From: Styela clava
Taxonomy: Eukaryota
Reading direction: 5' to 3'
DNA length: 64,000 nt
NCBI RefSeq assembly: GCF_964204865.1
Contig: NC_135251.1
Coordinates: 24,800,001 to 24,864,000 of the forward strand
The first letter of the stretch is position 1. Every line of letters starts with the position of its first letter. Below, one piece after another: positions 8,941 through 42,725 of the stretch. Below the pieces are notes generated by a model. The model ran no database searches. It saw only the letters and a program-made list of their open reading frames with translations, and was not told the origin of the DNA. The position numbers and the translations under genes are program-made.

Positions 8941-11261
8941 ATGGCAAAAGAAGGTGTCACTAAATGCGAAGGTAAGCGTTATAATTATTACAAAAGTAAG
9001 CGTCGCACGTTGTTGAAATATCGTCCAAAATTACTGTCGCAACAAAATCATTTCCAACATTAATTGGTGCAACAAAATCATTGCATCAGGATTCAAAAAT
9101 TGCTATGTTAAGCATACATTTGTTAGAATAGGCCGCGTAACAACATAGTAAGCTTATTAGCAAAGCTCACATATTAATGATCTTTGATAACCGAATTATC
9201 ATGCTAAAGCAGAATTGATCAATCAGACGTGATTTAGTTTTATAATAAACTTTTAAACGGTTATGTTTTTGGTTTGCATACGTCATTAGCGTGCTGTGAC
9301 ACTGCATTTTTACATACGGTATTTTGTATTAACAATATTTCGAGAACCTTCGGCTTGCTAGCAATCCACCTAGGAATAAGAGCAGTGATACGGATTGTTT
9401 TTCTAATTGCAAGATCATTAAAATTATGTATCGCACGTGGATTGAGATCAATTAATAATAATAATAAATGTAACAAGGTTGGGATAATATCCATGAATGT
9501 CCCGAAAGAAATCGTTCTTTTACTTATTCCAGCTCAAATACTTTTTATCAAGTCCATGCTTCCGAAAACAAATAACTAGTTAATCCCATACCCGACATGG
9601 AATGGTAACCGGACGAGAGGCTATGGTTCACCATATGGTTAATCCGTCATATCGGCTTTCCTCTCCCCCAGGATAAATATGTAAATCCTAATCATAACGA
9701 GAATACCATTAATTGGACAAGACTTCGAAACATGGCCTGTGAAAATTCACGCGCCTTTGACAGCTGGTACATGACAATATAAATTCTTGTATTATTTGTT
9801 TCAGTTCTTTCCTTTATCCTGAGCGGAATTCTCATTATCGGAGGAATAGCTTTGCTGGTTTCTCGTTTCCCACAGAAGTTTGCAGGATGGCAGATTCAAG
9901 ATCAGCTCATCATTTCTCCGAATTCGTCAATAGTAAATGCCTGGGAGAATCCTGAAGTACCGTGTTACATGAAATTCTACGTCTATAATGTTACCAACGG
10001 AAAAGAATTCATGAACGGTGAAAAACCTATTTTGGAAGAACATGGCCCTTACACCTACCGCATGGTATCGCCTCGTTTTGATATAAAATTTTATGTGAAT
10101 GATACAGTGTCTTTTCGAAGTAACCATACGTTATATTTTGAACCCGGCATGTCGAATGGCTCCGAAGATGACGTACTATTCCATATTAATCTTCCAATAG
10201 TGAAAGTAAGCGAGTCGGTACAGTCATCATCCATATCTCCGCTTTTGAGGCAATTCAAAGTTCCTGACAAACTCGTAAAGCTCGTAGGAAAAGAAGACCT
10301 CATAGTAGCACACACGGTGAAGGAGATCATCTTTGGTTACGACGAGCCAATGATGAAATTGGCCAGTAATATATTAGCCTGGTTCGGTAAAGATCTCGAC
10401 CCTACTTTCGGTCCTTTTCATGAATTTAACAACACTGACGACGGACTATTTTTAGTGGGTACAGGTAGAAAAAACTTCTCCACTTTCAACGTGATTGACC
10501 GATGGAACGGGAAAAAATTGCTTTCGTATTGGACGACCAAATATGCAAACATGATAAATGGAACAGACGGTTCATTTTTACGACCAAATGTTAAACGGAA
10601 CCAGACCAGATATACATACTTACCGCAAATGCAACGAGCCGCAAAGTTGGAATATGAACAGGACACAACTGTCAAAAGTGTTCGAACTTATAGATATCAT
10701 TTTGCGAACGACTTATTGGGTAACATTACCGAACAGCCAGACAACGCTGGATTTTGCGTCCCAGAGGGCAATTGTTTTGATTCCGGCGTTTTGAACGTTG
10801 GAAGAGGCGATGCGCCAATATTTCTGTCTCTTCCTCATTTTTATTTGGGGTCGGAAAACTTACAAAATGGAGTCGTAGGGCTATCACCAAACAAGACATT
10901 GCACGACTCCTTCTTTCACACCGAACCGCTCACTGGAGCCGTAATGCGTTCGCAGGAGAGGTTGCAAATCAATGCTCACGTTACGAAGTCGGATTATTTT
11001 GAACAACTGAGACAAGTTCAACCTGTGTTTTTTCCATATTTTTGGATTTCCGCAGAAGAATTGGTCAATGATGACATCGCCCTGAATCTGCTACATGCTA
11101 TGAAAGTTGTCGATTTTGCTTGCTACCTGGGTTACATAATAATATTTATTGGACTTGTCATTCTGGGAGCAACATTGGCTAAGTTGTACGTGCGACGTAG
11201 GTCTACGTTATCCCGCGATGAAGAACCGCTCATTTCCGATGATCATGCCGAAAACGCTTAG
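8941..11261 (+). CDS. SCARB2: CD36-family scavenger receptor class B, LIMP-2/SCARB2-like, about 495 aa, 2 coding exons
   Basis: Exon 8941-8971 (MAKEGVTKCE, donor GTAAGC) splices in phase to 9805-11261. N-terminal TM; FYVYNVTN...E.GPYTY; INGTDG; SLPHFY; EPLTG; C-terminal TM; cytosolic DEEPLI acidic dileucine motif like that of LIMP-2. Confidence 0.87.
9567..9690 (+). repeat. 3' fragment of a SINE-like dispersed repeat
   Basis: AAACAAATAACTAG..ATCCCATACC..GGTAACCGGACGAGA..CCTCTCCC..ATAAATAT..ATCCTA recurs at about 51580-51717. Confidence 0.6.
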
Positions 11262-27840: not shown

Positions 27841-29837
27841 GTGTAGTTAAACGCTGGTGTAGAACCTCTGCCTAATAAATATCGACAAATGCCATTGAAT
27901 TATAGTGTAGTTTTGTCTGGTTTACAAACACTTACTTAAACGATCAGTGTTTTATTTGTTATGCAAATATTCTGTATAATAAAGACTGACAAACATTATT
28001 GATTATTACAGAATCAAATAGCACAAGGATAATAATATATAACACTGAGTTGAAGCTGCAGAGATAGTGAACTCTGTTGAATTGCTGAAAAATGTTGTTT
28101 TATGAATCATTAAGGTGATACATAAGTCAGCGAGTGTTATGTACTGTAGATTGTCTAGTTCACATGTTTAAAACAATACTGGTGGATGCAAGTATGAATT
28201 TAAAGGGGTTCACAAACTTGTTTATGAAGAAAAGATATTCAGAAACGCCACATCTGCAAGTATTTTTATAGCGAGGCTATTTTAAAATATCAGCATACGA
28301 AATCGCATTATGCAAATGTGTTAAAACTATATAATTGTATAAAATGGAATTATATCAGTAAGAAAATAAAGTAAATGGTCTTACAGGGCATCGTGACGGA
28401 AAACTACATTTCACCAAGATTTAGTTTTGTTTATGTCCCAACAAGCAATTTGCACTTGTCGCGGACTGAAATTGGTGATGATGACGATTGCTTCGTTGCA
28501 AATATTCCGAGTGATTAATATAGTCTTCTGATGGGGAAAATTCTGCTTCTGCCATTCAAAATAGTAATGAAGTAATTCCTTTCACTCACTTAATCGTTAG
28601 ATGTATAGCATGTGCTTAGTCATATTTATATCTATATAGTTACAAGGAACTTGGCATTCGCATTAGTACTAACGCGAAACTGTTCTGAATCATCTCTGCA
28701 ATGTTTGGCCAGCATCACATCTGACGAGTTATTATCAATTTCTACAAAGCTAGATTGCCAAAATTTATATGATTCATATTATTTACGTCACTCGTTAGAT
28801 ATGATTTCATTTGAGTCGGGATTTGCCCATTTGCACATATTCCAATAAGAAAATTTTCTCCAATTATTTTTAGATTTTTCATTCTTCATGTAATGCTAGA
28901 TAGTGAAATATAGGTATTTTCTTTAAGCCAAGGATTTGCCTATTTGCAAATTCCAATAATAATTGAATATCCTTCAAATTTTTGATTCTTCAAATTCCTT
29001 TGTTATGGAACAAAAAGGACTTTGCATATAGGGAATTTCAATGTAGTGTTGAGTGTTGTGAATGTAGATGTCTAATATTGATTGGGTTGGATCCATATAA
29101 TTACAGGTAAAACACATAACCATATGCAATTTTGCTTTTATTCATAACCATCAATCAGACAGTCCTTTCTGTGGGGAGACCATGATAACGTTATCACCCA
29201 ATTTACTCCGAGCAATTTTGCAATCAGATATGTCACAATTGATCTTGCAATGGTAGGAAACCGACAGCCTATTCGTGTAGTAAAGAAAGGTGGAATTATT
29301 GATTGCTCAATGTACCCCCAAGGCTGTTCACATTTATTTACCCCCTATGTAGTAAATATTCCCCCAGTTAGGAACCCTGGTTAAATTGGTTTGCTAAATT
29401 TGGTCGCGATATATAAAGATGAACATATTTTTAAGACACCATTGACTAGATTTGCCAATAAAGAGTGGAACATGAATAATAATTGGCCAATGTTTTATTG
29501 ATGACGCAGTCATATTTGGAATCTATATTTATTAGTCGCATACTAATGCCAATGAATTATACTCCAGTTGCTGATATATCAAGACTGCACTTCCTCGTAA
29601 AATACTATGACGTCATCCTAGAAACAATGTTACACTATAATTTTCCTCCCCCGCTTCTCTTTGAATACTAAATATTGTTCAACGTTTGACCGATATTATT
29701 ATTGTGCTGTCATTCAGAAACCAACTGGCATCCTATTAAATATCAGGGTTGTTGGATTCGCATAAAATTCGATTGAAGTTTTGATTCAATTGTTTAAGTA
29801 GAAGCAGCATTCAACTCAACAGAAGGAATAGAGTGCC

Positions 29838-32800
29838 ATGGATACGACTAATCTATTTCAATATGCGTAAGTAAACTTGTTATTGTTGGGGAAAGAAAAT
29901 AACTTCATTTCTTATAACATCTTATACTTGATAATGCCTCCTTTTGTTCTACTGGGTAAATCTGCTGATAAAATTACATTTTGTTTGAAATGCTATTCTG
30001 TTTTTACCTTTATTTGAAAATCAACAAAGCAAGTGTATATGATATATCTCTGAAATATAGAATTAAATCGCAATGGTCAAGTTCCTATTCCCATATTTAA
30101 TAACGTGATAATTTGTTTTTGTTATAGTTACTTTGAAGCTACTGATCAATTCAGTTGTGTTAAAAATAGGGTGTACGCTATATTAATATAATTTCCACGA
30201 ACCTAATATTACCAAAAGTGATTTCTAAATTGGAAACTCTCATGCGTGAATATTTTTATTGTCCAGAGAAAATTATTAAGTCAAGTTATTCAGAACCCAA
30301 TATTCTTGGATTAAGAAATAGAACAAGACGTAATCGTCAAATACGGTTTATCCGATATATAAAAATATCTGTTTATGTTTTACAAACTGACATAGAACAA
30401 GACGACAAATTATTTATATATGTACACAGCAGCAGGATTATTATTATGGAAAATAAAGAAATATGTCGAGGAAAAATATACCTCATTAAAATCGATTTCA
30501 ATAAAATCTGTTTCGAATTCATAAATGTCGGTGGTAATCAAAATAAATAGCTGAAAATATATTTAAAAAAATTGTTGAGTATTTAATAAATTTATCGTAA
30601 TTGATACAGCTTAACGCTGGCTGGGTTCGTGCAAACGTATCCCATTGCTGGTTTACCAACACGGTGTTGCATTTATGCAAATGCGCAGAAATTCATTTGA
30701 GTTAGTTCTATATATTTTACGAGGTTTTGATATTAAAAATAACATTGAAAATTGAATCACGATTAGCCAACGATTAGCAAACTGAAAGCATTTCATTCAG
30801 TTTGAGACAAAAATGTAATTTTGTTCTAAATATCTTTTGGCATATAAATTTCGTTGGAAAGAGGGTGACCCGGCCAAGATTTTAACTTGATCAAACCCAA
30901 TCAAAATATATTGATGCATTGAATCATTTCGGTTTATTTTTGTGGTAATTTAATATTCATTGGAGACCGCTTTCACAGTTCACACGCCAATATGTATATA
31001 TACCATGGCATATACCATACCAAAAAAGTATCCAGTTAATAATTAATTTATCCAAGATGTAGTGTGTTCTATGGTCTTGGATATCTATGTTGTTTGCGAA
31101 TGGTTAACCACGCTATAATAATATTTCCGAATTTCATGCTTATATTCCTCGTGCTTCATATTTATTTGTACATTTCAGCTGGTATTACGGCAAGATTAAT
31201 AGACAAGAAGCAGAAGAAAATCTGATGGACCGAGGAGAGAATGAAGGATGTTTCCTTGTTCGGGAAAGTAAATCAAGACAAGGTAAATAGTGTATCAGTT
31301 GCTATATTTATCTCAGATATCACATAACATCAAGCATTTAAATGCGTGGGATATTTACACCAACACAAGTGCAGCTGGGGAATATATTTCAATTTTTAGT
31401 ATAGAAACTGAAAATTTCATTAAACAGGAAATGTAGAATGTACCTCTTTGTCTAAGACATCTATTCAAATCTATGAATACGGTTGTTGTAGCTGCATGGT
31501 TAAAAATAGTTATGCAATAATACATTGTGATGTTAGTAAAAGTTATACAATCATTCGTGTGATTCATCGCCTTAGACTCATTGCAACACTAACTCTATTG
31601 CAGCTTGTCATTTTCCATTCCGCATTATCCTTTTGTCAGCCTGGCTGCAGCCTGGCACTCATTTTCAAATCAACACATTCCCCGACTACAGTATCTTTTA
31701 TCTCACGTTACCATTTTGAGTGTGCTAACAATTTTAATGATCTCATTATCTGTTGGGTATTTTCCACCGGTTGCCTCCTAGATTCGTTCAGTACTGTAAC
31801 GTCATTATGTCTTCTTTTTTTTATATATATTTTGACATATGTAGGCAATTGGACATTATCAGTTTTGGATTGGGTAGACGGTGGATGCAGCGTAGGCCAT
31901 TATCTCATTTACAAAAATCCGAAAGGTGGATATTATTTTGACGAGGACACTGAATTCGACTCTATTCCTAAACTGATTGATTACTATAAAGGTATACATG
32001 AATACAATCTTATAACATAGACCAAGAAATATTTTCACCAATTGGATGTGGGTTCCGAGAATGTCACCGTAATAAAATTAATATATATTGAAATAACATA
32101 AAAATAGGTAAAATGATATGATGAAAATCAGTGAAATATTTTGAATGTTATAACCGATTTTATATTCACACTCCAGCACATCCTAAAACCGTAACATTCA
32201 CAATAAAAGAACCGTGTCCGAGGGAGGTTTTGCTTCCTGATAAAGACGAGGATGAATATGATTTATACGAAATCGCAACTGAACTTCCTCTTCATCAAAC
32301 GTTTCACAAGGAATCTTTAATATCATCTTCATCTGTGTGCGCGGTCTGGAAAGGTGAGTTGAATAATACCAATGTAGACAAGATTCTCCACTTGGAGCGA
32401 ATTCATTCATCCATTTTGATCGTTAAAACCGTATTTGTTTGCATTTTCATTAACACTGCAATGAATGCGCAGTAGACATTACGGCGCTTCAGAAGTTTGT
32501 GTACCAATATGGAGGTGACTAATATTGTTTGCCTACTTCACATCAAGTTGTGTAAAAGGACGGAAACCTATGGGCAGGGGGTATAATCACTTGGCTAACA
32601 CATGCAGTCCCTGAACTCGTAATAGAACTAAAATAAGAAAAATTGGAATAAAGTTATGGCCTAACCCTAACCTGGTTCACATACTACGGGAGTACCGACG
32701 GTACTGTATGAATTAACCAAAATAATTCGCTCGGGTATTAAATGGGAGAAAAAATTTAGGCACTTCTTCTCACTTATCTTGTATGTGAGTTAATTCGAAT

Positions 32801-35800
32801 TTAATATTTAGTCTAAGTTTAAAAAAGTAACTGAATATTGCAATATTCTATTTTAGTCTAAATTTCAAAAAAGTAACTTAATATTGCAATATTCTATTTT
32901 AGTCTAATTTTCAAAAAAGTAACTGAATATTGCAATATTCTATTTTCCAGGTCACTTAGGATTGCACGACACGGTAAAAATCGTAGCAAAAATTGCGGTT
33001 GGTGATTCACAGGAATCGAAACATATTTTAATGCATGAGGCAAACATGCTAAAATGCCTTTGTCATGAAAACATTGTCAAAATGCGTGGAGTGGTGAGTC
33101 ATTGTTTTATTCTTACATGTATTCATTGATTTAAATTGGCTTATGTCACTAACAGTAACAAATAGGTCATCAAACAATTTCTGACGGTAGGTAGTGATCG
33201 TATTATGACGAATGGGGTTGGCAACATGATATGTATATGTTTTATGCAGCCAGAATATATAACGAATTATAGAGATCTAAATCCATGTGCTTGATCACAA
33301 AAATATCTTTTAAGAGACGGGCGGACTGTTTAAATAAGGGTTAATTACTTATCGATCTTAAGATCGCTAAGTATGTTGATAGTTATTTGTCTGTCTGTCT
33401 GTTTGATGAACGCGCTATCTCACGAAGGCGAGGTTGAATCTGCTCCAAATTTTGCATGTGCATTCATCATATCTCGGACCAGAAGCCTATTGATTTTGGA
33501 CGAATAATGTCGTATAATTAGCGAGTTATTAATTATATAGTGATGGAACACGCGGTGTCACTATAGAGTCATGAATCGAAACCGCAGTTTTGATCGATAA
33601 GTCTTCGGTCTCCGACCGATATTCTCGTTAGTATATTATCGTTTGATATCTTATATTCTCATAAACGAAGCGTCAATGGAATTAGAATTAATAAATTGGT
33701 AATCACAATAAAATAATTTGACGTGCGGCTGTCGTCGCCCAGTATCAATAACCCCTTTGCAACAGTACAATTAGGAGGACCAACGTCAATGTCTGAAACC
33801 TAAATCAGCGTTAATGCGCAAAGAATATGCGATTGTCAGGCAATCTGATGAGAGCGCAAAATAAAATTGGCGACAGTCAGGAAATGCCGCATTATGACAT
33901 CAAAAGTATATCCATAAGATTGTGAACTTCTCAGTTAGAAATACCTGCTTTTACTATTGTGTGTGCGTATGACAAATGTTCGGTTAAAGTACAGTTTCCG
34001 GTATGACAATTTCACAGTAGAACTCTGCACCCAAGACGCGACCGAGAAAATACTTGGTGCAAATGCAAATCGTTCGCTCTAAAAAAATTCTTCCCTCAGA
34101 CATTGTATTCTATGCGTATCGTATCTAAAAATGCATTGATGACAACTTGAAATGGCGCCACAATTTTTTTGGTTGCTGTTTAACCATAGTTGTTGAATGT
34201 AGTTAGCTTACGGCTGTTTCGCTACGCTTGAGTGGTAATGAGTTACGTCATAGTTTCGCTATATCTAGTATTTCATTTGCGTGTAGATTTTGAAGGATTT
34301 AATAAACATAAACAAACCAGTTGAAGCTGGAGCCGTGACATTTCGATGGAGCTGGAGCCGATCTGACCATAATAGATGGAGCTGGAGCCGGAGCTATCAG
34401 AAATAACAGTGGCTCCAGCTCCTGACAATGGAATTACTTTTCTGATTCTGTTTTTTCAATAATTCTTAGGGTTGAGTTGGAATTGTGCTCATCAATTACG
34501 CCGATTTCAATTCAATAATCTTTCGCGTCTTCAAAGTTTAACCAGTGGCTCCAGCTCCTGACAATGGAATTACTTTTCTGATTCTGATTTTTCAATAATT
34601 CTTAGGGTTGAGTTGGAATTGTGCTCATCAATTACGCCGATTTCAATTCAATAATCTTTCGCGTCTCCAAAGATTAACCAGAACCAAATAACTGGCAGCC
34701 ACGGCACATGTACGAATATCGGATATAGCGATGTGCACTGATTTTATTTATTGCGTTTCATGCGGTATTATCAAATTACCATATGTGATATAGATTAGTT
34801 AGTTATTTATTCGTGTTGATGATCCGCACAAAATTCGTTTGCGGGCCGCATTTTGCCCGTGGGCCGCAGTTTGCCGATCTCTGCTATAGATTCTATAGTA
34901 TGCATCTTCAGCAGTTCAATTGCTAAACTGTTTACGTCTTCGCTATATACACATTGCCACGTTATGGAACCTCCTGGCGTATACTACCGGCACACCGTTT
35001 CCTCGGACAGAGTGCGGTACAGAATCTGTTGAATTATTTGGTCGGGCCACAAAATTGGTATAATATGTAAAAAAAAACTTGTCAACAGTGAAAAAGAGCA
35101 ACATATTACAGAATTTTGAAATTCCAGATTTCCAAGACGACACCATTTCATCTTTTACAAGATTACGCAGGAGATACAAATCTGATTGGACTTCTACTCA
35201 AAAACGGAAGGTCTGAATTTACTCTGATGGACCAATTAAATGTGAGCATACAGGTGAGATTTGAGAAAAGTTAAACAAGATTTATTCTTTCCATTATATA
35301 TTTATATTCAAACGAAATAATAAATAAAGGAGCCTTAACGAGAATAAGGTATGTCGATTAACAACCATTGCCTTTTTATATTGATATTCCTTTTTTACGC
35401 CTTGAAAACGCTTGGTTTGTACTCTGCATGGTCTTGTTTAATTCTGTCCGAGATGGAATTCAGGTACAAACAAATGAGCTACCTGCAGAAATGTTCAATT
35501 ATCCTGATACTTACATACAGATACTATACAAAAGATGTTTAAAGTTACATTCTAAACTCTCTCATATTTGCAGATAGCATCAGCTTTGAGCTTTTGTGAA
35601 AAAATGAAATGTGTTCACCGAAACGTAAAAGCTAAAAGCGTTATCGTAAATACTACAGACCTGAAATGCAGGCTTGGTTCGTTTAAACATGCGAGAACAA
35701 TAGATACTCATGGATTTTTCCACGATTTCAACACAGGTATTATCTTGGTCATCGGTGATAACTTCTGAAGATTTAATATTGCATTTTCAATTCTCACCAC

Positions 35801-38125
35801 ATTCGAATATGGAAACTTTTGTTGTTGGATTGGGTCCACTTTTCTAGACCTAGCATACTGATGAGAATCTGATGCCAGCGGCACTTAATCATCTGTTTCT
35901 AATGGGCTATTTTTGAATTAAATCAGGAACATGCGAATATACACATTTGGACCGATTCATTAGCGGCCGACTGACTTTACAAGTCAACCATTTATAAGCG
36001 GGTCAGAAATGTATTTTGGAATGTATTTTCAAATATATATACAATGTTGAAACGTTGAAAAATAAATTAGTTCTCTGTAGCTATAACTGAGAATTCGAAA
36101 AAAAACGCAGACAATAAAACGAAGTGATATCAGTATTTCGAACATTTATCCTTCTGTTAGGTATTTATTGCTTCAAGAAGTTTACAAACCACGACAAGTT
36201 CAATACCATGCAAAGGCTAAATTTATTCATAATCTACAGATCATAGTTATTCAATTGTACACACGAGTAGACTTCGATGGATGTCGCTAGAAGCTGCGAA
36301 ACAGGGAAGGTATTCACATGCATCCGATGCTTGGTCGTTTGGAATTTTTCTCATTGAACTTTTCACCGGTGGAGCTTTACCTTATGCAGGTACGCGACGT
36401 GGTTCAACATCTGCAATTAGCTATTGTCAAATATTGTTTCAAATTTGGTTGTCGACGCACCATCGTACTACAAGCGACGTCGTAATGTGTCGCGACTCAC
36501 AGTCTGGAAAGCTCTGATTTATATTGTGTTCGACTCCTGAAAACAGACTGAAGAATAAGTAATTGATTACGATCCTCATAAGCTGGTTGAATCTATTTCT
36601 TAATTTTTGCAATCAAAAATGAGAAATGCATAAAAACTACAGCTACACGCCTATTTTATTTTTTGTGTTTTGATTTTTAGGTTACCTGACCTCTAGAATA
36701 CTATCTGAAGTTGAAGAAGGATTTCGCTGTTCAAAGCCCACGTCATGTCCAATGGAAATTTATGAATTGATGCATCAATGCTGGATGTTTTCAGAAACGA
36801 CTAGACCGGATTTCAGTACGATTAAGGTAACAATTTTGTCATGCATCTGTACAGACAGATACATATACAAATGTCTCTGGAAACCGTTTAACTCGGTTTG
36901 GCTACTGGTTACATGACTAACAATTCCATCCGTTGAACTAGAAAGGTAAATTGGAAGTAGTAGGCTATACCTACATGCAGATAATCAGCTTAAGATTGAC
37001 GTGTTATATCGTGTAAACGTGCGGTAAAAGACGCCCCGTTTGCATAAGATGCATTGCACAATGCACTGTTTTTCAGGCTATGGCTGCTTTTGCTGGTATT
37101 CGGAGAGTAGGTATTAGAATAGGAGTTTAATTTTTGTTTCTTCATAATCGGAGTCGGAAAGTTTCAGACCTCGGTCGGCGATGTTTTTATTGCCAGAATT
37201 TGGGTAACCTAGAGATTAATTCAATATGGGGTGTACTAGGGTATTGTATACTGAACTGCAAGTCCTTTTTCCTTGTTTACTTTCTATTGGGGAAACGTAT
37301 GTGTCAGTTGCCACAAGGATGCTTGGACGAGAGATAAATATGAATAACATAATCTCTTTGAACGAAATCTTTATCATTTGCAGCCATATTTTGTTTTATC
37401 TGAAGAAGTTAGACTATGATCTAACGAAAGCTCATAAATAAACTTTCTATTTCGTGGAAAAAGATTATGTTATTCATATTGATTCAAAAGTTAGAGTTTT
37501 TTCTAACCCGGTATCAGAGCTGCATGACGCTTTGAATCGGTTCAGAATCGGGTGTCATTTTTCTCCGATTCCACAATTTTAGTTAATTGCTTATCTTCGG
37601 CTACTCTACTTAATCATACCTTCGCAAGTTGCTGTTGCAATTGCTTCATCTGGAGTAAGAAAACCTCCGAAAAATTTAGAATATATATAATATATAAATG
37701 GATAGTCTATAATAATTTAAAACATCGAAAAGCCCCTTTGAAGACTTGCGTGAATTGATAGTTAATTCATTTTAGAAAGTTAAAATACATTTCAAACTAA
37801 TTCATTTTTGATGGCAATAGAACGTATTTCTGGAAAAAATGTCGCTAACTAAGTACTAGATTTTTTGTGTTTGAAGTATTCACATAAACAATAATTGATA
37901 CTTGCGCAATTTCAAATTGTATTTTTATATTTATCGCAGAACAAATTAGTGAAGTATCGAGATGACAACTATGAAGCACTCGTTAAACTTATTCCTACAA
38001 AGTCACGCGATAAAGACAGGTATGCGCCATGCAAGCAATTGAGTGTTAAACAACAACGGACCGCGAGATCTCGTCCGGCACCACCTAATCTGCCACCAGT
38101 TTCACAGTATGGATACGACAATTGA
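29838..38125 (+). CDS. SH2-domain plus tyrosine-kinase-fold pseudokinase (Src/Frk/Abl-type architecture without SH3), about 456 aa, 10 exons
   Basis: Exons 29838-29866, 31179-31282, 31845-31991, 32177-32353, 32951-33093, 35128-35253, 35574-35736, 36240-36389, 36681-36826 and 37940-38125 are all GT-AG and phase-consistent (1371 nt, no internal stop). SH2: WYYGKINRQEAE...FLVRES. Kinase: HENIV, RWMSLE, SDAWSFG, LPY, CP.EIY.LM..CW....RP.F. The first and last exons are least certain. Confidence 0.88.
32483..32696. mobile_element. Merlin-like MITE (asymmetric GGCGC/GGTAC ends)
   Basis: GGCGCTTCAGAAG...CCTAACCCTAACCTGG...GGGAGTACC; degenerate 8-bp TSD GACATTAC/GACGGTAC. Confidence 0.75.
32807..32946. 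repeat. Three tandem copies of an approximately 47-bp unit abutting a splice acceptor
   Basis: TTTAGTCTAA.TTT.AAAAAAGTAACTGAATATTGCAATATTCTAT repeated three times. Confidence 0.85.
33344..33629 (+). mobile_element. Helentron-associated (HINE/DINE-like) non-autonomous element
   Basis: Subterminal IR ACTTATCGATC / GATCGATAAGT, short 5' palindrome, (TGTC)n tract, 3' stem-loop TCGGTC-TCC-GACCGA, T-rich ends. A second copy is at 56401-56667. Confidence 0.75.
34407..34681. repeat. Near-perfect 136-bp tandem duplication in an intron
   Basis: CAGTGGCTCCAGCTCCTGACAATGG...TTAACCAG starts at 34407 and again at 34543. Confidence 0.9.
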
Positions 38126-40659: not shown

Positions 40660-42725
40660 TCAAGAACAAGATGTGCTATTATATGTTCTAGTTTCAGACA
40701 CATATACAGCCAAACTTAGACCATTTATTACACCACTTACAAACTGGCAAAGTGCTATTGTTAAAAATGCATAGCAGTGGGAAACAAATATTCCTTCCTT
40801 AGAGCGAAGAGAAGTTATTTCAGAAACAAAAGTTGAAACGGTTGTGAGACAAGCACAAAAACCACTTTGCAGTGCCCTGAAAAATGCTTTCCATGGACAC
40901 CACATATTTGTCCAAACAAGAATGACATTCAAAAATGCCATAACAGTGGCTCCTATAAAATTCGCCAAAAATGTCCCAATAGGCATTCGTTTCAAAAAAC
41001 CATATTTCAGGCAAGGTCTCGTATTCACATTAAGTTTTGACAAAATAAACCTTAATGTTGCACCAAAAGGTGCTAATACGCCACAAAGACATGTATATAT
41101 AATATTCTGGTGGTGTGAGTAAACAATAGCTAATACTGATAAAGTTATCCATGATATTATAAAAAAGGGAATAGATATGTAAATAATGGATTTTGAAACT
41201 TTAATACTCCGTCGTTGCCTTGAAAAATCTGTGCCATCTGTTACGCAAACCACTTTTCGAATTTCAAGTGATAAGTCATGACCAAATATGAATGAACAAA
41301 TTGGTGCAGCGATGCCTAGAATGATAGCAGCAAATGCAGTGAAATATGGATTCCCAATTGTTATCGCTTGTCCCACTATCATTTCAGATACTTGTTGATT
41401 AAACTTTGAAAATGTTGTGATCGATCCACATAGACCTGTATTGATAAATAAAAGTCAAGAGGATTACAATAATTAAAGTAAATCTGACAAAAAATAATTT
41501 TATCTTATGTATGAGAAAATTTTTGCAAACACACAAAAATTTTTAATTCAGAGTTGAATAAAAGAGTATGGAATTCTGAAATCAAGATGATGAAATAATT
41601 GTTTATGAAAATTTTAATAAAGCAACTGCTAATAAAGCTCATTTCGACTATAATAAAGCATTTCCCAGCAACAGATGAAAGGTAAATAATAATAAACAGA
41701 AGCAAACATCGAAACCACTTTGACTTGGAACTCAAAAAAACTGAGGCTAAGGTAAGCAAAGTTTATCAAACATCAACACTAAAGTCACAGAGATAGAGAA
41801 TACTTTAATTTGCAGCCCTAATTAATTTTTTGAAACAGTGGAAATGTAAGTCAACTACCTCTTAAAGACCAGAATATTCTATTTTTGCTATTAGTTTTTG
41901 ACACCATGCTGGGATCATTATGGTTTATTAACTAGAATTTATAATACCAACAAGAATATTCCTAAATATGAGTGGGTGCTTGATTAATGCCTTGTTATGA
42001 GAGCTGTGAGAGGACCTTACAATAAAACAGTTTATAATGCGGGTCAAAGTCTAAAAAACTAACATAAAAAATAAAAATAGTTGTGTTGAAATAAAAAGGT
42101 CAAATAGAATATTTGGGAACAGAGGGTACCAACATTTGGGCAAATTAGCAAACTTGAATATTAATACATTTGTTCACTATTACCTAATGTGAAGCATCTG
42201 GCACTTGAGCTACCATTGTATCATCACAAAATCTAATATTAGTAAATAATCTGAGTAACTCTGTGAATGGCAAATTGAACAGCATGGAACGATAGGCCTG
42301 ACATAAGGCTCTGTACAAGGAAACTGATTGCTGAATTGTTTTTTTATAATTTTATAAACATTGTATTTTCATAACTGCATACCTGTTGATAATCCAGTGT
42401 AAATTGGCAACATTCCAGACATGTTCTTGAGTGTTGAAGCAGTGAGTAATCCCAATATAAAACTCCCAATCATGTTCGCGAAAAAAGATTGAAATATTAT
42501 GGAGTTAGGACTTTCAATTTGCATGTACGTATTCGAACTAAGTCCATAATCCACACCGACTCTGATTATACAGCCGACAATGGAAAATGTCGCAACACTC
42601 AGATAAGAATATAATGACGTTTTCAAGTCCGCATTAGATATGTGTGACGAGGAACGTAACCTAGAGGTTGCTATAATATCGGCATTCTGGAGCTCGATTG
42701 CATCAATTTTTCCGATCGGATCCAT
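40660..42725 (-). CDS. FEX: Fluoride export protein FEX (two fused CrcB/Fluc domains), about 372 aa, 2 exons
   Basis: Exons 42725-42383 and 41435-40660 (1119 nt, phase 1). Domain 1: G..IR, FFANMIGSFILG, GLSTGLCGSITTFSKF. Domain 2: APFGATLR..LS, PIGTFLANFIG, GFCACLTTVSTF. Confidence 0.92.

What the first reader, a model, noticed from the sequence alone, without database searches (positions are those of the whole stretch)
29838..38125. Intact SH2-tyrosine pseudokinase: a catalytically dead Src-like protein with no SH3
Seen: ten exons splice into an uninterrupted ORF with a strong GCCATGG start, so this is not a decayed pseudogene, yet nearly every catalytic motif is altered. The Gly loop GxGxxG reads ISSSSVC, HRD reads HRN (catalytic Asp lost), the catalytic-loop Asn is Ser (HRNVKAKSV), DFG reads SFK, and APE reads SLE; only the beta-3 Lys (IVAK) and alphaC Glu (HEAN) remain. 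The SH2 keeps the pTyr-binding Arg (FLVRES) and begins about 10 residues from the N-terminus, with no SH3 and no myristoylation Gly. Established: known tyrosine pseudokinases are mainly receptor types (PTK7, ROR, RYK, HER3, EphA10/B6) or the JAK JH2 domain. Inference: a standalone cytoplasmic SH2-pseudokinase acting as a phosphotyrosine decoy, scaffold or dominant-negative regulator, probably lineage-specific and undescribed.
Basis: partly seen in the sequence, partly recalled or inferred. Interest (0 to 1): 0.82.

Follow-up and report, generated by a model that had tools for sequence, protein, structure and literature searches.

The report
Conserved Src-derived SH2 pseudokinase, Styela clava
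This is a real, intact sea-squirt gene for a Src-like protein that kept its phosphotyrosine-binding SH2 domain and its kinase fold but lost the SH3 domain and almost all catalytic residues; a second species keeps the same losses, so it probably works as a non-catalytic signalling adaptor or regulator.

Summary
Ten GT-AG exons (29838-38125, +) give a 456-aa ORF. It is identical to a public record, XP_039260496 'tyrosine-protein kinase yes-like' of Styela clava.

The protein has an SH2 domain (residues 11-92) and a full-length tyrosine-kinase fold (142-398). The beta-3 Lys and alphaC Glu remain.

No SH3 or other domain was found upstream, and an in-frame TAG sits 9 nt before the ATG.

A 462-aa orthologue from an unnamed assembly is 53% identical. 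It has the same start, the same dead motifs (HRN, KAKS, CFK) and the same C-terminal Y-x-Y-D-N. Neutral drift to that divergence left no open frame in 200 simulations.

By sequence, by fold and by a modestly supported tree it derives from the Src/Frk group; its intron positions also match the canonical Src gene. It sits on a very long stem branch.

It is single-copy, and no other annotated proteome showed a full-length relative. I found no paper on it.

The verdict is a new variant of a known kind, a conserved cytoplasmic Src-derived pseudokinase. Its function is inferred. RNA evidence could not be obtained.

The parts
29480..29837 (+). Putative promoter and 5' UTR region: CCAAT-like and TGACGTCA-like boxes, and an in-frame TAG at 29829-29831 just before the start codon
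   Evidence: Read directly. There is no RNA evidence, so the transcription start is not defined.
29838..29866 (+). Exon 1: start codon in GCCATGG context, residues 1-10 (MDTTNLFQYA); no Gly2 for myristoylation
   Evidence: The orthologue P0151 starts at the same aligned Met.
31179..31282 (+). Exon 2: N-terminal half of SH2, with the alphaA2 Arg (NRQEAE) and the betaB5 Arg (FLVRES)
   Evidence: Pfam SH2 profile positions 1-32, E 7e-11. It holds the most conserved 20-aa window between the orthologues, 85%.
31845..31991 (+). Exon 3: C-terminal half of SH2, with the betaD4 His (GHYLI)
   Evidence: Pfam SH2 positions 37-77. The best PDB hits are the Src, Yes and Fyn SH2 domains.
32177..32353 (+). 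Exon 4: SH2-kinase linker with the conserved acidic tyrosine motif EDEYDLYEI, and the degenerate Gly loop ISSSSVC
   Evidence: No paralogue of this exon exists in the genome.
32951..33093 (+). Exon 5: beta-3 Lys (IVAKI) and alphaC Glu (MHEAN)
   Evidence: Pfam PK_Tyr_Ser-Thr positions 28-69; alignment.
35128..35253 (+). Exon 6: hinge and alphaD-alphaE region
   Evidence: Part of the high-confidence kinase fold.
35574..35736 (+). Exon 7: catalytic loop HRNVKAKS (HRD to HRN; RAAN to KAKS) and GSFKH in place of DFG
   Evidence: The region 254-285 is 72% identical to the orthologue, against 54% overall.
36240..36389 (+). Exon 8: end of the lengthened activation segment (Tyr300), WMSLEA in place of APE, and alphaF SDAWSFG
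   Evidence: Pfam 48 bits. This exon was the query that returned P0003 and the fragments P0018 and P0029.
36681..36826 (+). Exon 9: alphaG-alphaI of the C-lobe (CW...RP)
   Evidence: Pfam positions 211-254; PDB hits.
37940..38125 (+). Exon 10: conserved post-kinase helix KYRDDNYEALVKLIP, proline-rich RSRPAPPNLPP, C-terminal QYGYDN and the TGA stop
   Evidence: The tail Y-x-Y-D-N is shared with P0151.

Best explanation
**Shown.** The locus is a single-copy, 10-exon gene of the tunicate Styela clava, annotated in RefSeq as XP_039260496 'yes-like'. It arose by DNA-level duplication of a Src/Frk-group tyrosine-kinase gene. It lost the SH4 and SH3 region. It passed through a burst of divergence that removed the Gly loop, the catalytic Asp, the catalytic-loop Asn and the DFG Asp. 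It has since been kept under purifying selection in at least two species.

**Inferred.** The protein does not phosphorylate. Its intact SH2 domain docks on phosphotyrosine sites. The rigid pseudokinase domain has a remodelled cleft region that is unusually conserved. Together with conserved tyrosine and proline motifs in the linker (EDEYDLYE) and tail (PxxP, C-terminal Y-x-Y-D-N, a pY-x-N type site), it serves as an interaction platform. The protein would then act as a phosphotyrosine-dependent adaptor or competitive regulator of Src-family signalling. It would work like the kinase-less Src-like adaptor SLAP or the PEAK pseudokinase scaffolds.
For: - **Gene model.** The model is verified and is identical to public record P0003.
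- **Domains.** SH2 plus a full kinase fold by Pfam. The AlphaFold model has kinase-domain pLDDT mostly above 90. A kinase-domain-only match to Lck has TM 0.92 and rmsd 2.5 A, and c-Src is the top full-length match.
- **Src origin.** PDB bit scores are Src 197, Abl 148, Btk 132, Csk 126. The tree puts P0003 and P0151 together (100/100) inside a Src/Frk clade (92/93) that excludes the Btk orthologue and the Fer-like gene. Seven of eight mapped intron positions coincide, at HSP resolution, with exon boundaries of the canonical Styela Src gene.
- **Constraint.** P0151 is 53% identical over its full length with only 3 gapped positions. It shares HRN, KAKS, CFK, the start Met and the C-terminal YxYDN. 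None of 200 neutral simulations to that divergence kept an open frame, with a mean of 12 stops. The stem branch is 2.58 substitutions per site against tips of 0.54 and 0.32.
- **SH2 function.** SH2 is the best conserved domain (66%; the pTyr-binding strand is 85%). The catalytic-loop and DFG-equivalent region is 72% identical against 54% overall.
- **No SH3.**
Against:
- The source species of P0151, P0029 and P0018 are unknown. That P0151's 2.5-kb contig is a transcript is an inference.
- The beta-3 Lys and alphaC Glu are kept. HRN also occurs in HER3, which has weak activity, so residual or atypical catalysis or nucleotide binding is not excluded.
- The adaptor mechanism and the motif readings (pYxN, PxxP) are pattern-based and untested. 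The PxxP pattern is only loosely conserved.
- The position inside the Src/Frk clade is unresolved, and the long branch could mislead.
Confidence: 0.72

Rival explanations
1. It is an atypical but active kinase, or a nucleotide-dependent switch. Lys165 and Glu182 still form the ATP-anchoring pair, and catalysis proceeds by a non-canonical route, as reported for HER3 (HRN), CASK or WNK.
For: The beta-3 Lys and alphaC Glu are conserved in both orthologues. The cleft region 254-285 is more conserved (72%) than the protein as a whole. The kinase fold is predicted with confidence.
Against: Four separate catalytic elements are lost together, and all four are lost in both species: the Gly loop, the HRD Asp, the catalytic-loop Asn and the DFG Asp. 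The Gly-loop equivalent is poorly conserved, at 36%.
Confidence: 0.1
2. The 5' end is mis-modelled. The true protein has an upstream SH3, or another N-terminal domain, and is an ordinary Src-module protein with a dead kinase.
For: No transcript data were available to me. Tunicate mRNAs are often trans-spliced, so 5' ends are hard to read from DNA alone (my own knowledge). A second degenerate Src-like gene in this genome does keep SH3 hits.
Against: There is an in-frame TAG 9 nt upstream of the ATG with no pyrimidine tract before it. There is no SH3_1 hit anywhere in the 64-kb window at E<=1. None of 96 plus-strand open frames between 21932 and 31177 shows a domain. RefSeq predicts the same 456 aa. 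The independent orthologue P0151 begins at the same Met and has no SH3.
Confidence: 0.05
3. It is a non-functional relic: a duplicated Src gene decaying neutrally that happens still to be open.
For: The stem branch is very long, 2.58 substitutions per site. All catalytic motifs are lost. Only 197 bits to Src, against 503 bits for the Btk orthologue to human BTK.
Against: The frames are open in two species at 53% identity. None of 200 neutral simulations stayed open. There are almost no indels. Conservation is uneven and peaks on the SH2 pTyr pocket. All splice sites are intact.
Confidence: 0.04

Closest known systems
Src-family kinases (Src, Yes, Fyn, Lck, Hck); the canonical Styela Src gene at G000:C19:13.609-13.622 Mb
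   Same: The SH2 domain and kinase fold match best by sequence and by structure. The catalytic loop K-A-K-S has the Src-type R-A-A-N spacing. Intron positions are shared. Both lie in the same tree clade.
   Different: It has no SH4 myristoylation site, no SH3 and no PPII linker. Catalytic residues are lost. The activation segment is about 10 residues longer. The tail is 58 residues rather than about 15. Identity is only 27-31%.
SLAP/SLAP2 (Src-like adaptor proteins)
   Same: They are Src-derived proteins that signal without catalysis, using SH2-mediated docking to modulate tyrosine-kinase pathways (my own knowledge, not tested here).
   Different: SLAP keeps SH3 and SH2 and has lost the whole kinase domain. 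This protein keeps SH2 and a dead kinase domain and has lost SH3. No homology beyond the SH2 domain was tested.
Tyrosine pseudokinases: HER3, the JAK JH2 domain, PTK7/ROR/RYK/EphA10/EphB6/STYK1, and the PEAK1-3 scaffolds
   Same: A kinase fold is kept after catalytic residues are lost. HER3 also reads HRN. PEAK proteins recruit Grb2, Crk and Csk through tyrosine and proline motifs (PMC10279719; list of receptor pseudokinases in PMC13259870).
   Different: Those are receptors, an internal JH2 domain next to an active kinase, or non-SH2 scaffolds. None is a stand-alone cytoplasmic SH2 plus Src-type pseudokinase.
Nematode SH2-tyrosine kinase proteins without SH3
   Same: They have the same two-domain layout and a similar length. 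They are the nearest clusters by language-model features, at scores of 0.97-0.99.
   Different: The resemblance is in architecture only, with no alignment made. From my own knowledge, those are Fer-related expansions and mostly keep their catalytic motifs.

Membership tests
Src-family kinase (SFK) | N-terminal SH4 with Gly2 myristoylation | tested here: not met
   The N-terminus is MDTTNL in this protein and MEASSL in the orthologue.
Src-family kinase (SFK) | SH3 domain N-terminal to SH2 | tested here: not met
   No SH3 in P0003 or P0151 by Pfam. None in the window or in upstream open frames.
Src-family kinase (SFK) | SH2 domain with pTyr-binding Arg residues | tested here: met
   Pfam SH2 at 80.5 bits. 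The alphaA2 Arg, FLVRES and the betaD4 His are all present.
Src-family kinase (SFK) | Catalytically competent kinase domain (GxGxxG, VAIK, HRDLRAAN, DFG) | tested here: not met
   The motifs read ISSSSVC, HRNVKAKS and SFK. Only the Lys and the alphaC Glu are kept.
Src-family kinase (SFK) | C-terminal regulatory Tyr (Tyr527-type) about 15-20 residues after the kinase domain | tested here: inconclusive
   Tyr406 (NYEAL) lies at a similar distance but is His in P0151. The conserved tyrosines are at the far C-terminus, in YxYDN.
Src-family kinase (SFK) | Descent from the Src/Frk clade | tested here: met
   The tree clade has 92/93 support and excludes the Btk orthologue and the Fer-like gene. Best PDB scores. 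Shared intron positions. Taxon sampling was small, with 13 rows.
Pseudokinase | Retained bilobal protein-kinase fold | tested here: met
   Pfam 175.5 bits over profile positions 7-258 of 258. AlphaFold pLDDT above 90 over most of residues 140-410. TM 0.92 to the Lck kinase domain.
Pseudokinase | Loss of at least one of the VAIK Lys, HRD Asp or DFG Asp | tested here: met
   The HRD Asp is Asn and the DFG Asp is Ser. The Gly loop and the catalytic-loop Asn are also lost.
Pseudokinase | Maintained by selection (not a pseudogene) | tested here: met
   An orthologue with the same substitutions and an open frame, and a neutral simulation with 0 of 200 frames open. dN/dS was not computable because no orthologue DNA was available.
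Pseudokinase | No phosphotransfer activity | not testable with these tools
   This needs a biochemical assay.

The most novel reading that the evidence does not exclude
Ascidians may carry a lineage-specific set of Src-derived pseudokinases. One is this SH2-only form. A second has SH3 and SH2 and lies beside the canonical Src gene. Together they would form a non-catalytic regulatory layer on Src-family signalling. The remodelled and conserved cleft of this protein would bind a partner kinase or ligand, rather than merely being dead. That would make it the first stand-alone cytoplasmic Src-type pseudokinase regulator.
Probability: 0.25. Interest if true: 0.7.

Novelty: new variant of a known kind. 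Interest (0 to 1): 0.52.

Why it matters
The tyrosine pseudokinases described so far are receptors, the JAK JH2 domain or the PEAK scaffolds. A conserved, stand-alone SH2 plus Src-type pseudokinase would be a natural experiment in what the Src SH2-kinase unit can do without catalysis and without SH3 clamping. It would also give ascidian developmental and immune biology a candidate built-in modulator of Src signalling.

The gene is already in RefSeq under a name ('yes-like') that implies an active kinase. The practical gain is a corrected annotation and a testable hypothesis, not a new class of molecule.

Tried and rejected

- **RNA evidence.** No runs were available.
- **Orthologue DNA.** I got no DNA, no source sample and no dN/dS for P0151, P0029 or P0018.
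- **Metagenome scan.** The scan with the family profile returned one locus, L011. It is an ordinary active receptor-type kinase with HRDLAARN and DFG at 48% GC, so it is not a relative.
- **First AlphaFold run.** A 15-row alignment gave pLDDT 48 and was discarded. The 69-row run was used instead.
- **Interdomain geometry.** The overall rmsd to SFK structures is about 15 A. I draw nothing from the predicted SH2-kinase arrangement.

**Leads that did not hold**
- **Exon-level PDB hits.** Alone they were ambiguous: exon 8 hit ErbB3, PTK6 and Fes, and exon 9 hit Abl and JAK3. This was resolved only with the full-length record.
- **Kinase cluster at C2:7.72-7.87 Mb.** It was the best exon-8 match within the genome. 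It has an SH3 hit beyond the kinase hit on the same strand and no listed SH2 hit nearby. I judged it unrelated.
- **Literature.** No description of this protein was found. The Kwon et al. 2019 pseudokinase survey was not held.

- My own joined exon model was never sent to a search tool; it was used only in local scripts. Full-length searches used the database record P0003 by id, after the exon-8 search returned it.
Full report
**Observation**

I rebuilt the gene from the raw window. Ten exons lie on the + strand:

| Exon | Window coordinates |
|---|---|
| 1 | 29838-29866 |
| 2 | 31179-31282 |
| 3 | 31845-31991 |
| 4 | 32177-32353 |
| 5 | 32951-33093 |
| 6 | 35128-35253 |
| 7 | 35574-35736 |
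| 8 | 36240-36389 |
| 9 | 36681-36826 |
| 10 | 37940-38125 |

All nine introns are GT-AG. The CDS is 1371 nt and encodes 456 aa with no internal stop. The ATG sits in GCCATGG, and an in-frame TAG lies 9 nt upstream.

Pfam gives SH2 on exons 2 and 3, and PK_Tyr_Ser-Thr on exons 5, 7, 8 and 9. The hits are colinear with the profiles.

**Identity of the gene**

I searched the 1.8-billion-protein representative library exhaustively with exon 8. It returned a 456-aa record, P0003, matching at residues 298-346. That record is letter-for-letter my local join. Its source name is XP_039260496 'tyrosine-protein kinase yes-like [Styela clava]'. An earlier RefSeq version differs by one residue, T387A.

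The window is G000:C2:24800001-24864000 of a 377-Mb assembly. From this point I used P0003 by id for full-length work. My own joined sequence was never sent to a search tool.

On P0003, Pfam scores SH2 (residues 11-92) at 80.5 bits. It scores PK_Tyr_Ser-Thr (142-398) at 175.5 bits, covering profile positions 7-258 of 258.

**Is the N-terminus real?**

Several results say there is no hidden SH3:
- No SH3_1 match occurs anywhere in the 64-kb window, even at E<=1. The nearest on the chromosome is about 280 kb away and weak.
- I scanned all 96 plus-strand open frames of 28 aa or more between 21932 and 31177. This covers the upstream intergenic DNA and intron 1. They gave no domain.
- The in-frame TAG before the ATG has no pyrimidine tract in front of it.
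- RefSeq predicts the same start.
- The independent orthologue P0151 starts at the same aligned Met and has no SH3.

The neighbours are an intronless CD36-family gene at 9852-11261 and a CrcB/FEX-like gene on the minus strand at 40660-42725. Neither is obviously linked to this gene.

**Relatives**

The word-index search with P0003, and then with a three-sequence profile, found one full-length relative. This is P0151, 462 aa and 53% identical at 100% coverage, from an unnamed Logan contig of 2519 nt. The exon-8 search also gave fragments:

| Record | Length | Identity |
|---|---|---|
| P0029 | 189 aa | 43-46% overall; 60% within exon 8 |
| P0018 | 69 aa | 71% within exon 8; it carries SIE where S. 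clava has SLE |
| P0082, P0091 | 59 and 73 aa | possible members |

Everything else in the two word-index searches is an ordinary Src-family kinase at 25-29% identity.

P0151 is not encoded in the S. clava genome. Its best per-exon matches are this locus at 48-66%, and exons 3 and 4 have no paralogue. So P0151 is an orthologue from another species, and the S. clava gene is single-copy.

A 1389-nt ORF uninterrupted on a 2.5-kb contig is most simply a transcript.

**Dead motifs are shared and old**

| Element | Canonical Src (Styela C19 gene) | P0003 | P0151 |
|---|---|---|---|
| Gly loop | LGAGMFG | LISSSSVC | HISTGVLC |
| Catalytic loop | HRDVRAAN | HRNVKAKS | HRNIKAKS |
| DFG | DFG | SFK | CFK |
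| APE | APE | SLE | APE |
| beta-3 Lys | present | kept | kept |
| alphaC Glu | present | kept | kept |

The inactivating changes therefore predate the split of the two species.

**Evidence of constraint**

- Identity by region: SH2 66%, C-lobe 54%, N-lobe 46%, linker 47%, tail 55%. There are only 3 gapped positions.
- The best conserved 20-residue windows are:
  - the SH2 pTyr-binding strand, 85%;
  - a post-kinase helix KYRxDNxEALVKL, 75%;
  - the DFG-equivalent strand, 75%;
  - an acidic tyrosine motif in the linker (PDKEDEYDLYE), 75%;
  - the catalytic loop, 70%.
- Random substitution of the S. clava CDS down to 54% protein identity gave a mean of 12 stops. None of 200 runs kept an open frame.

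I could not compute dN/dS without orthologue DNA. Synonymous sites would in any case be saturated at this distance.

**Origin**

Against all PDB sequences, bit scores fall off in this order:

| PDB family | Bits |
|---|---|
| Src | 197 |
| Fgr | 184 |
| Hck | 179 |
| Abl | 148 |
| Btk | 132 |
| Csk | 126 |

The SH2 exon alone hits Src, Yes and Fyn first. For scale, the intronless Styela Btk orthologue on C17 scores 503 bits to human BTK. This protein is therefore extremely diverged.

I fetched the genome's other SH2-kinase loci and chained their exons on a fish Lck sequence. An IQ-TREE analysis of 13 rows gives three results:
- P0003 and P0151 are sisters, with 100/100 support.
- They sit on a stem of 2.58 substitutions per site, against tips of 0.54 and 0.32.
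- They fall inside a clade with 92/93 support. It holds the canonical Styela Src (C19b), a second Src-like gene (C1), an HRDLAARN-type gene (C9) and fish Lck and Blk. It excludes the Btk orthologue, the Fer-like gene and two other kinases.

The order within that clade is unresolved, and the sampling is small.

The gene's intron positions, mapped to Lck coordinates, are 139, 189, 240, 284, 325, 420 and 468. They coincide at HSP resolution with exon boundaries of the canonical Src gene. One further intron, in the activation segment, did not map to Lck. This points to duplication at the DNA level followed by loss of the 5' SH3-coding part.

**Fold**

A shallow alignment gave an unusable model with pLDDT 48. 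A 69-row alignment gave mean pLDDT 78 and pTM 0.69. In that model the kinase domain is mostly above 90 and the SH2 domain is at 58-78.

Foldseek puts c-Src (1y57), Fgr and Hck first. The kinase domain superposes on Lck at TM 0.92 and rmsd 2.5 A. The relative placement of SH2 and kinase is not reliable.

**Mechanism**

*Shown:* an intact, conserved SH2 domain plus a Src-type kinase fold without catalytic residues.

*Inferred:* the protein is non-catalytic.
- Its SH2 domain keeps the alphaA2 Arg, the betaB5 Arg and the betaD4 His, so it should bind phosphotyrosine.
- Conserved tyrosines lie in the linker, the activation segment and the extreme C-terminus. The C-terminal Y-x-Y-D-N is a pY-x-N pattern.
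- The tail has a proline-rich stretch.

These features fit an adaptor that is itself phosphorylated and recruits other SH2 and SH3 proteins. They also fit a competitor for Src-family docking sites.

The dead cleft is better conserved than the average of the protein. This suggests it has gained a binding or conformational role. It also keeps open a minority reading of nucleotide binding or atypical activity, since HER3 too reads HRN.

**Comparison with what is known**

The receptor tyrosine pseudokinases in human are EphA10, EphB6, HER3, PTK7, ROR1, ROR2, RYK and STYK1 (PMC13259870). The cytoplasmic examples are the JAK JH2 domain and the PEAK scaffolds (PMC10279719). I found no paper describing a stand-alone SH2 plus Src-type pseudokinase, or this protein.

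The SH2-kinase layout without SH3 is not new in itself. The nearest language-model clusters are nematode SH2-tyrosine kinases.

**Verdict**

Its weight is moderated by three points:
- The gene is already annotated.
- Lineage-specific pseudokinases derived from active paralogues are a known kind.
- Function and expression are untested here.

I rate it a new variant of a known kind, with interest 0.52.

Noticed in passing
G000:C19:13594001-13603000 (locus L001, minus strand): A second Src-like gene lies directly beside the canonical Src gene. It has SH3 hits and an SH2 domain (FLIRES). Its kinase-like domain is degenerate: Gly loop LDGGFNENVYKG, HRD to HRF, RAAN to RAQS, DFG to DYG, APE to SPE. 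Every exon-level match I examined reads open. S. clava therefore seems to have at least two Src-derived pseudokinase genes. This one is not closer to the window gene than canonical Src is.
   Followed up: partly
G000:C19:13609001-13623000 (loci L002 and L003, minus strand): The canonical Styela Src gene has two tandem, similar copies of the exon encoding the end of SH3. It also has two copies of the exon encoding the SH2-kinase linker and Gly loop. This suggests mutually exclusive alternative exons.
   Followed up: no
G000:C17:20219117-20220427 (locus L007:1117-2427, +): An intronless SH3-SH2-kinase open frame of 645 aa is the BTK/Tec orthologue, at 503 bits to human BTK. An intronless form of a normally multi-exon gene may be a retrogene. 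I did not check for a PH domain.
   Followed up: partly
G000:C2:7722593-7870816: A cluster of at least four similar tyrosine-kinase exons is spaced about 43 kb apart. An SH3 hit lies beyond one kinase hit on the same strand, which would fit an Ack-like kinase-then-SH3 order. These were the best matches to exon 8 within the genome.
   Followed up: no
window 9852-11261 (+): A single-exon 469-aa ORF is a full-length CD36-family protein (Pfam 413 bits).
   Followed up: no
window 40660-42725 (-): Two exons carry CrcB-like domains, as in a eukaryotic FEX-type fluoride exporter. The gene lies tail-to-tail with the pseudokinase gene.
   Followed up: no
window 34300-34690 (intron 5): A direct duplication of about 120 bp (ccagtggctccagctcctgacaatggaattacttttctgattctg...) and GGAGCTGGAGCC-type repeats lie inside the 2-kb intron 5. 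This is probably a repeat-element insertion.
   Followed up: no
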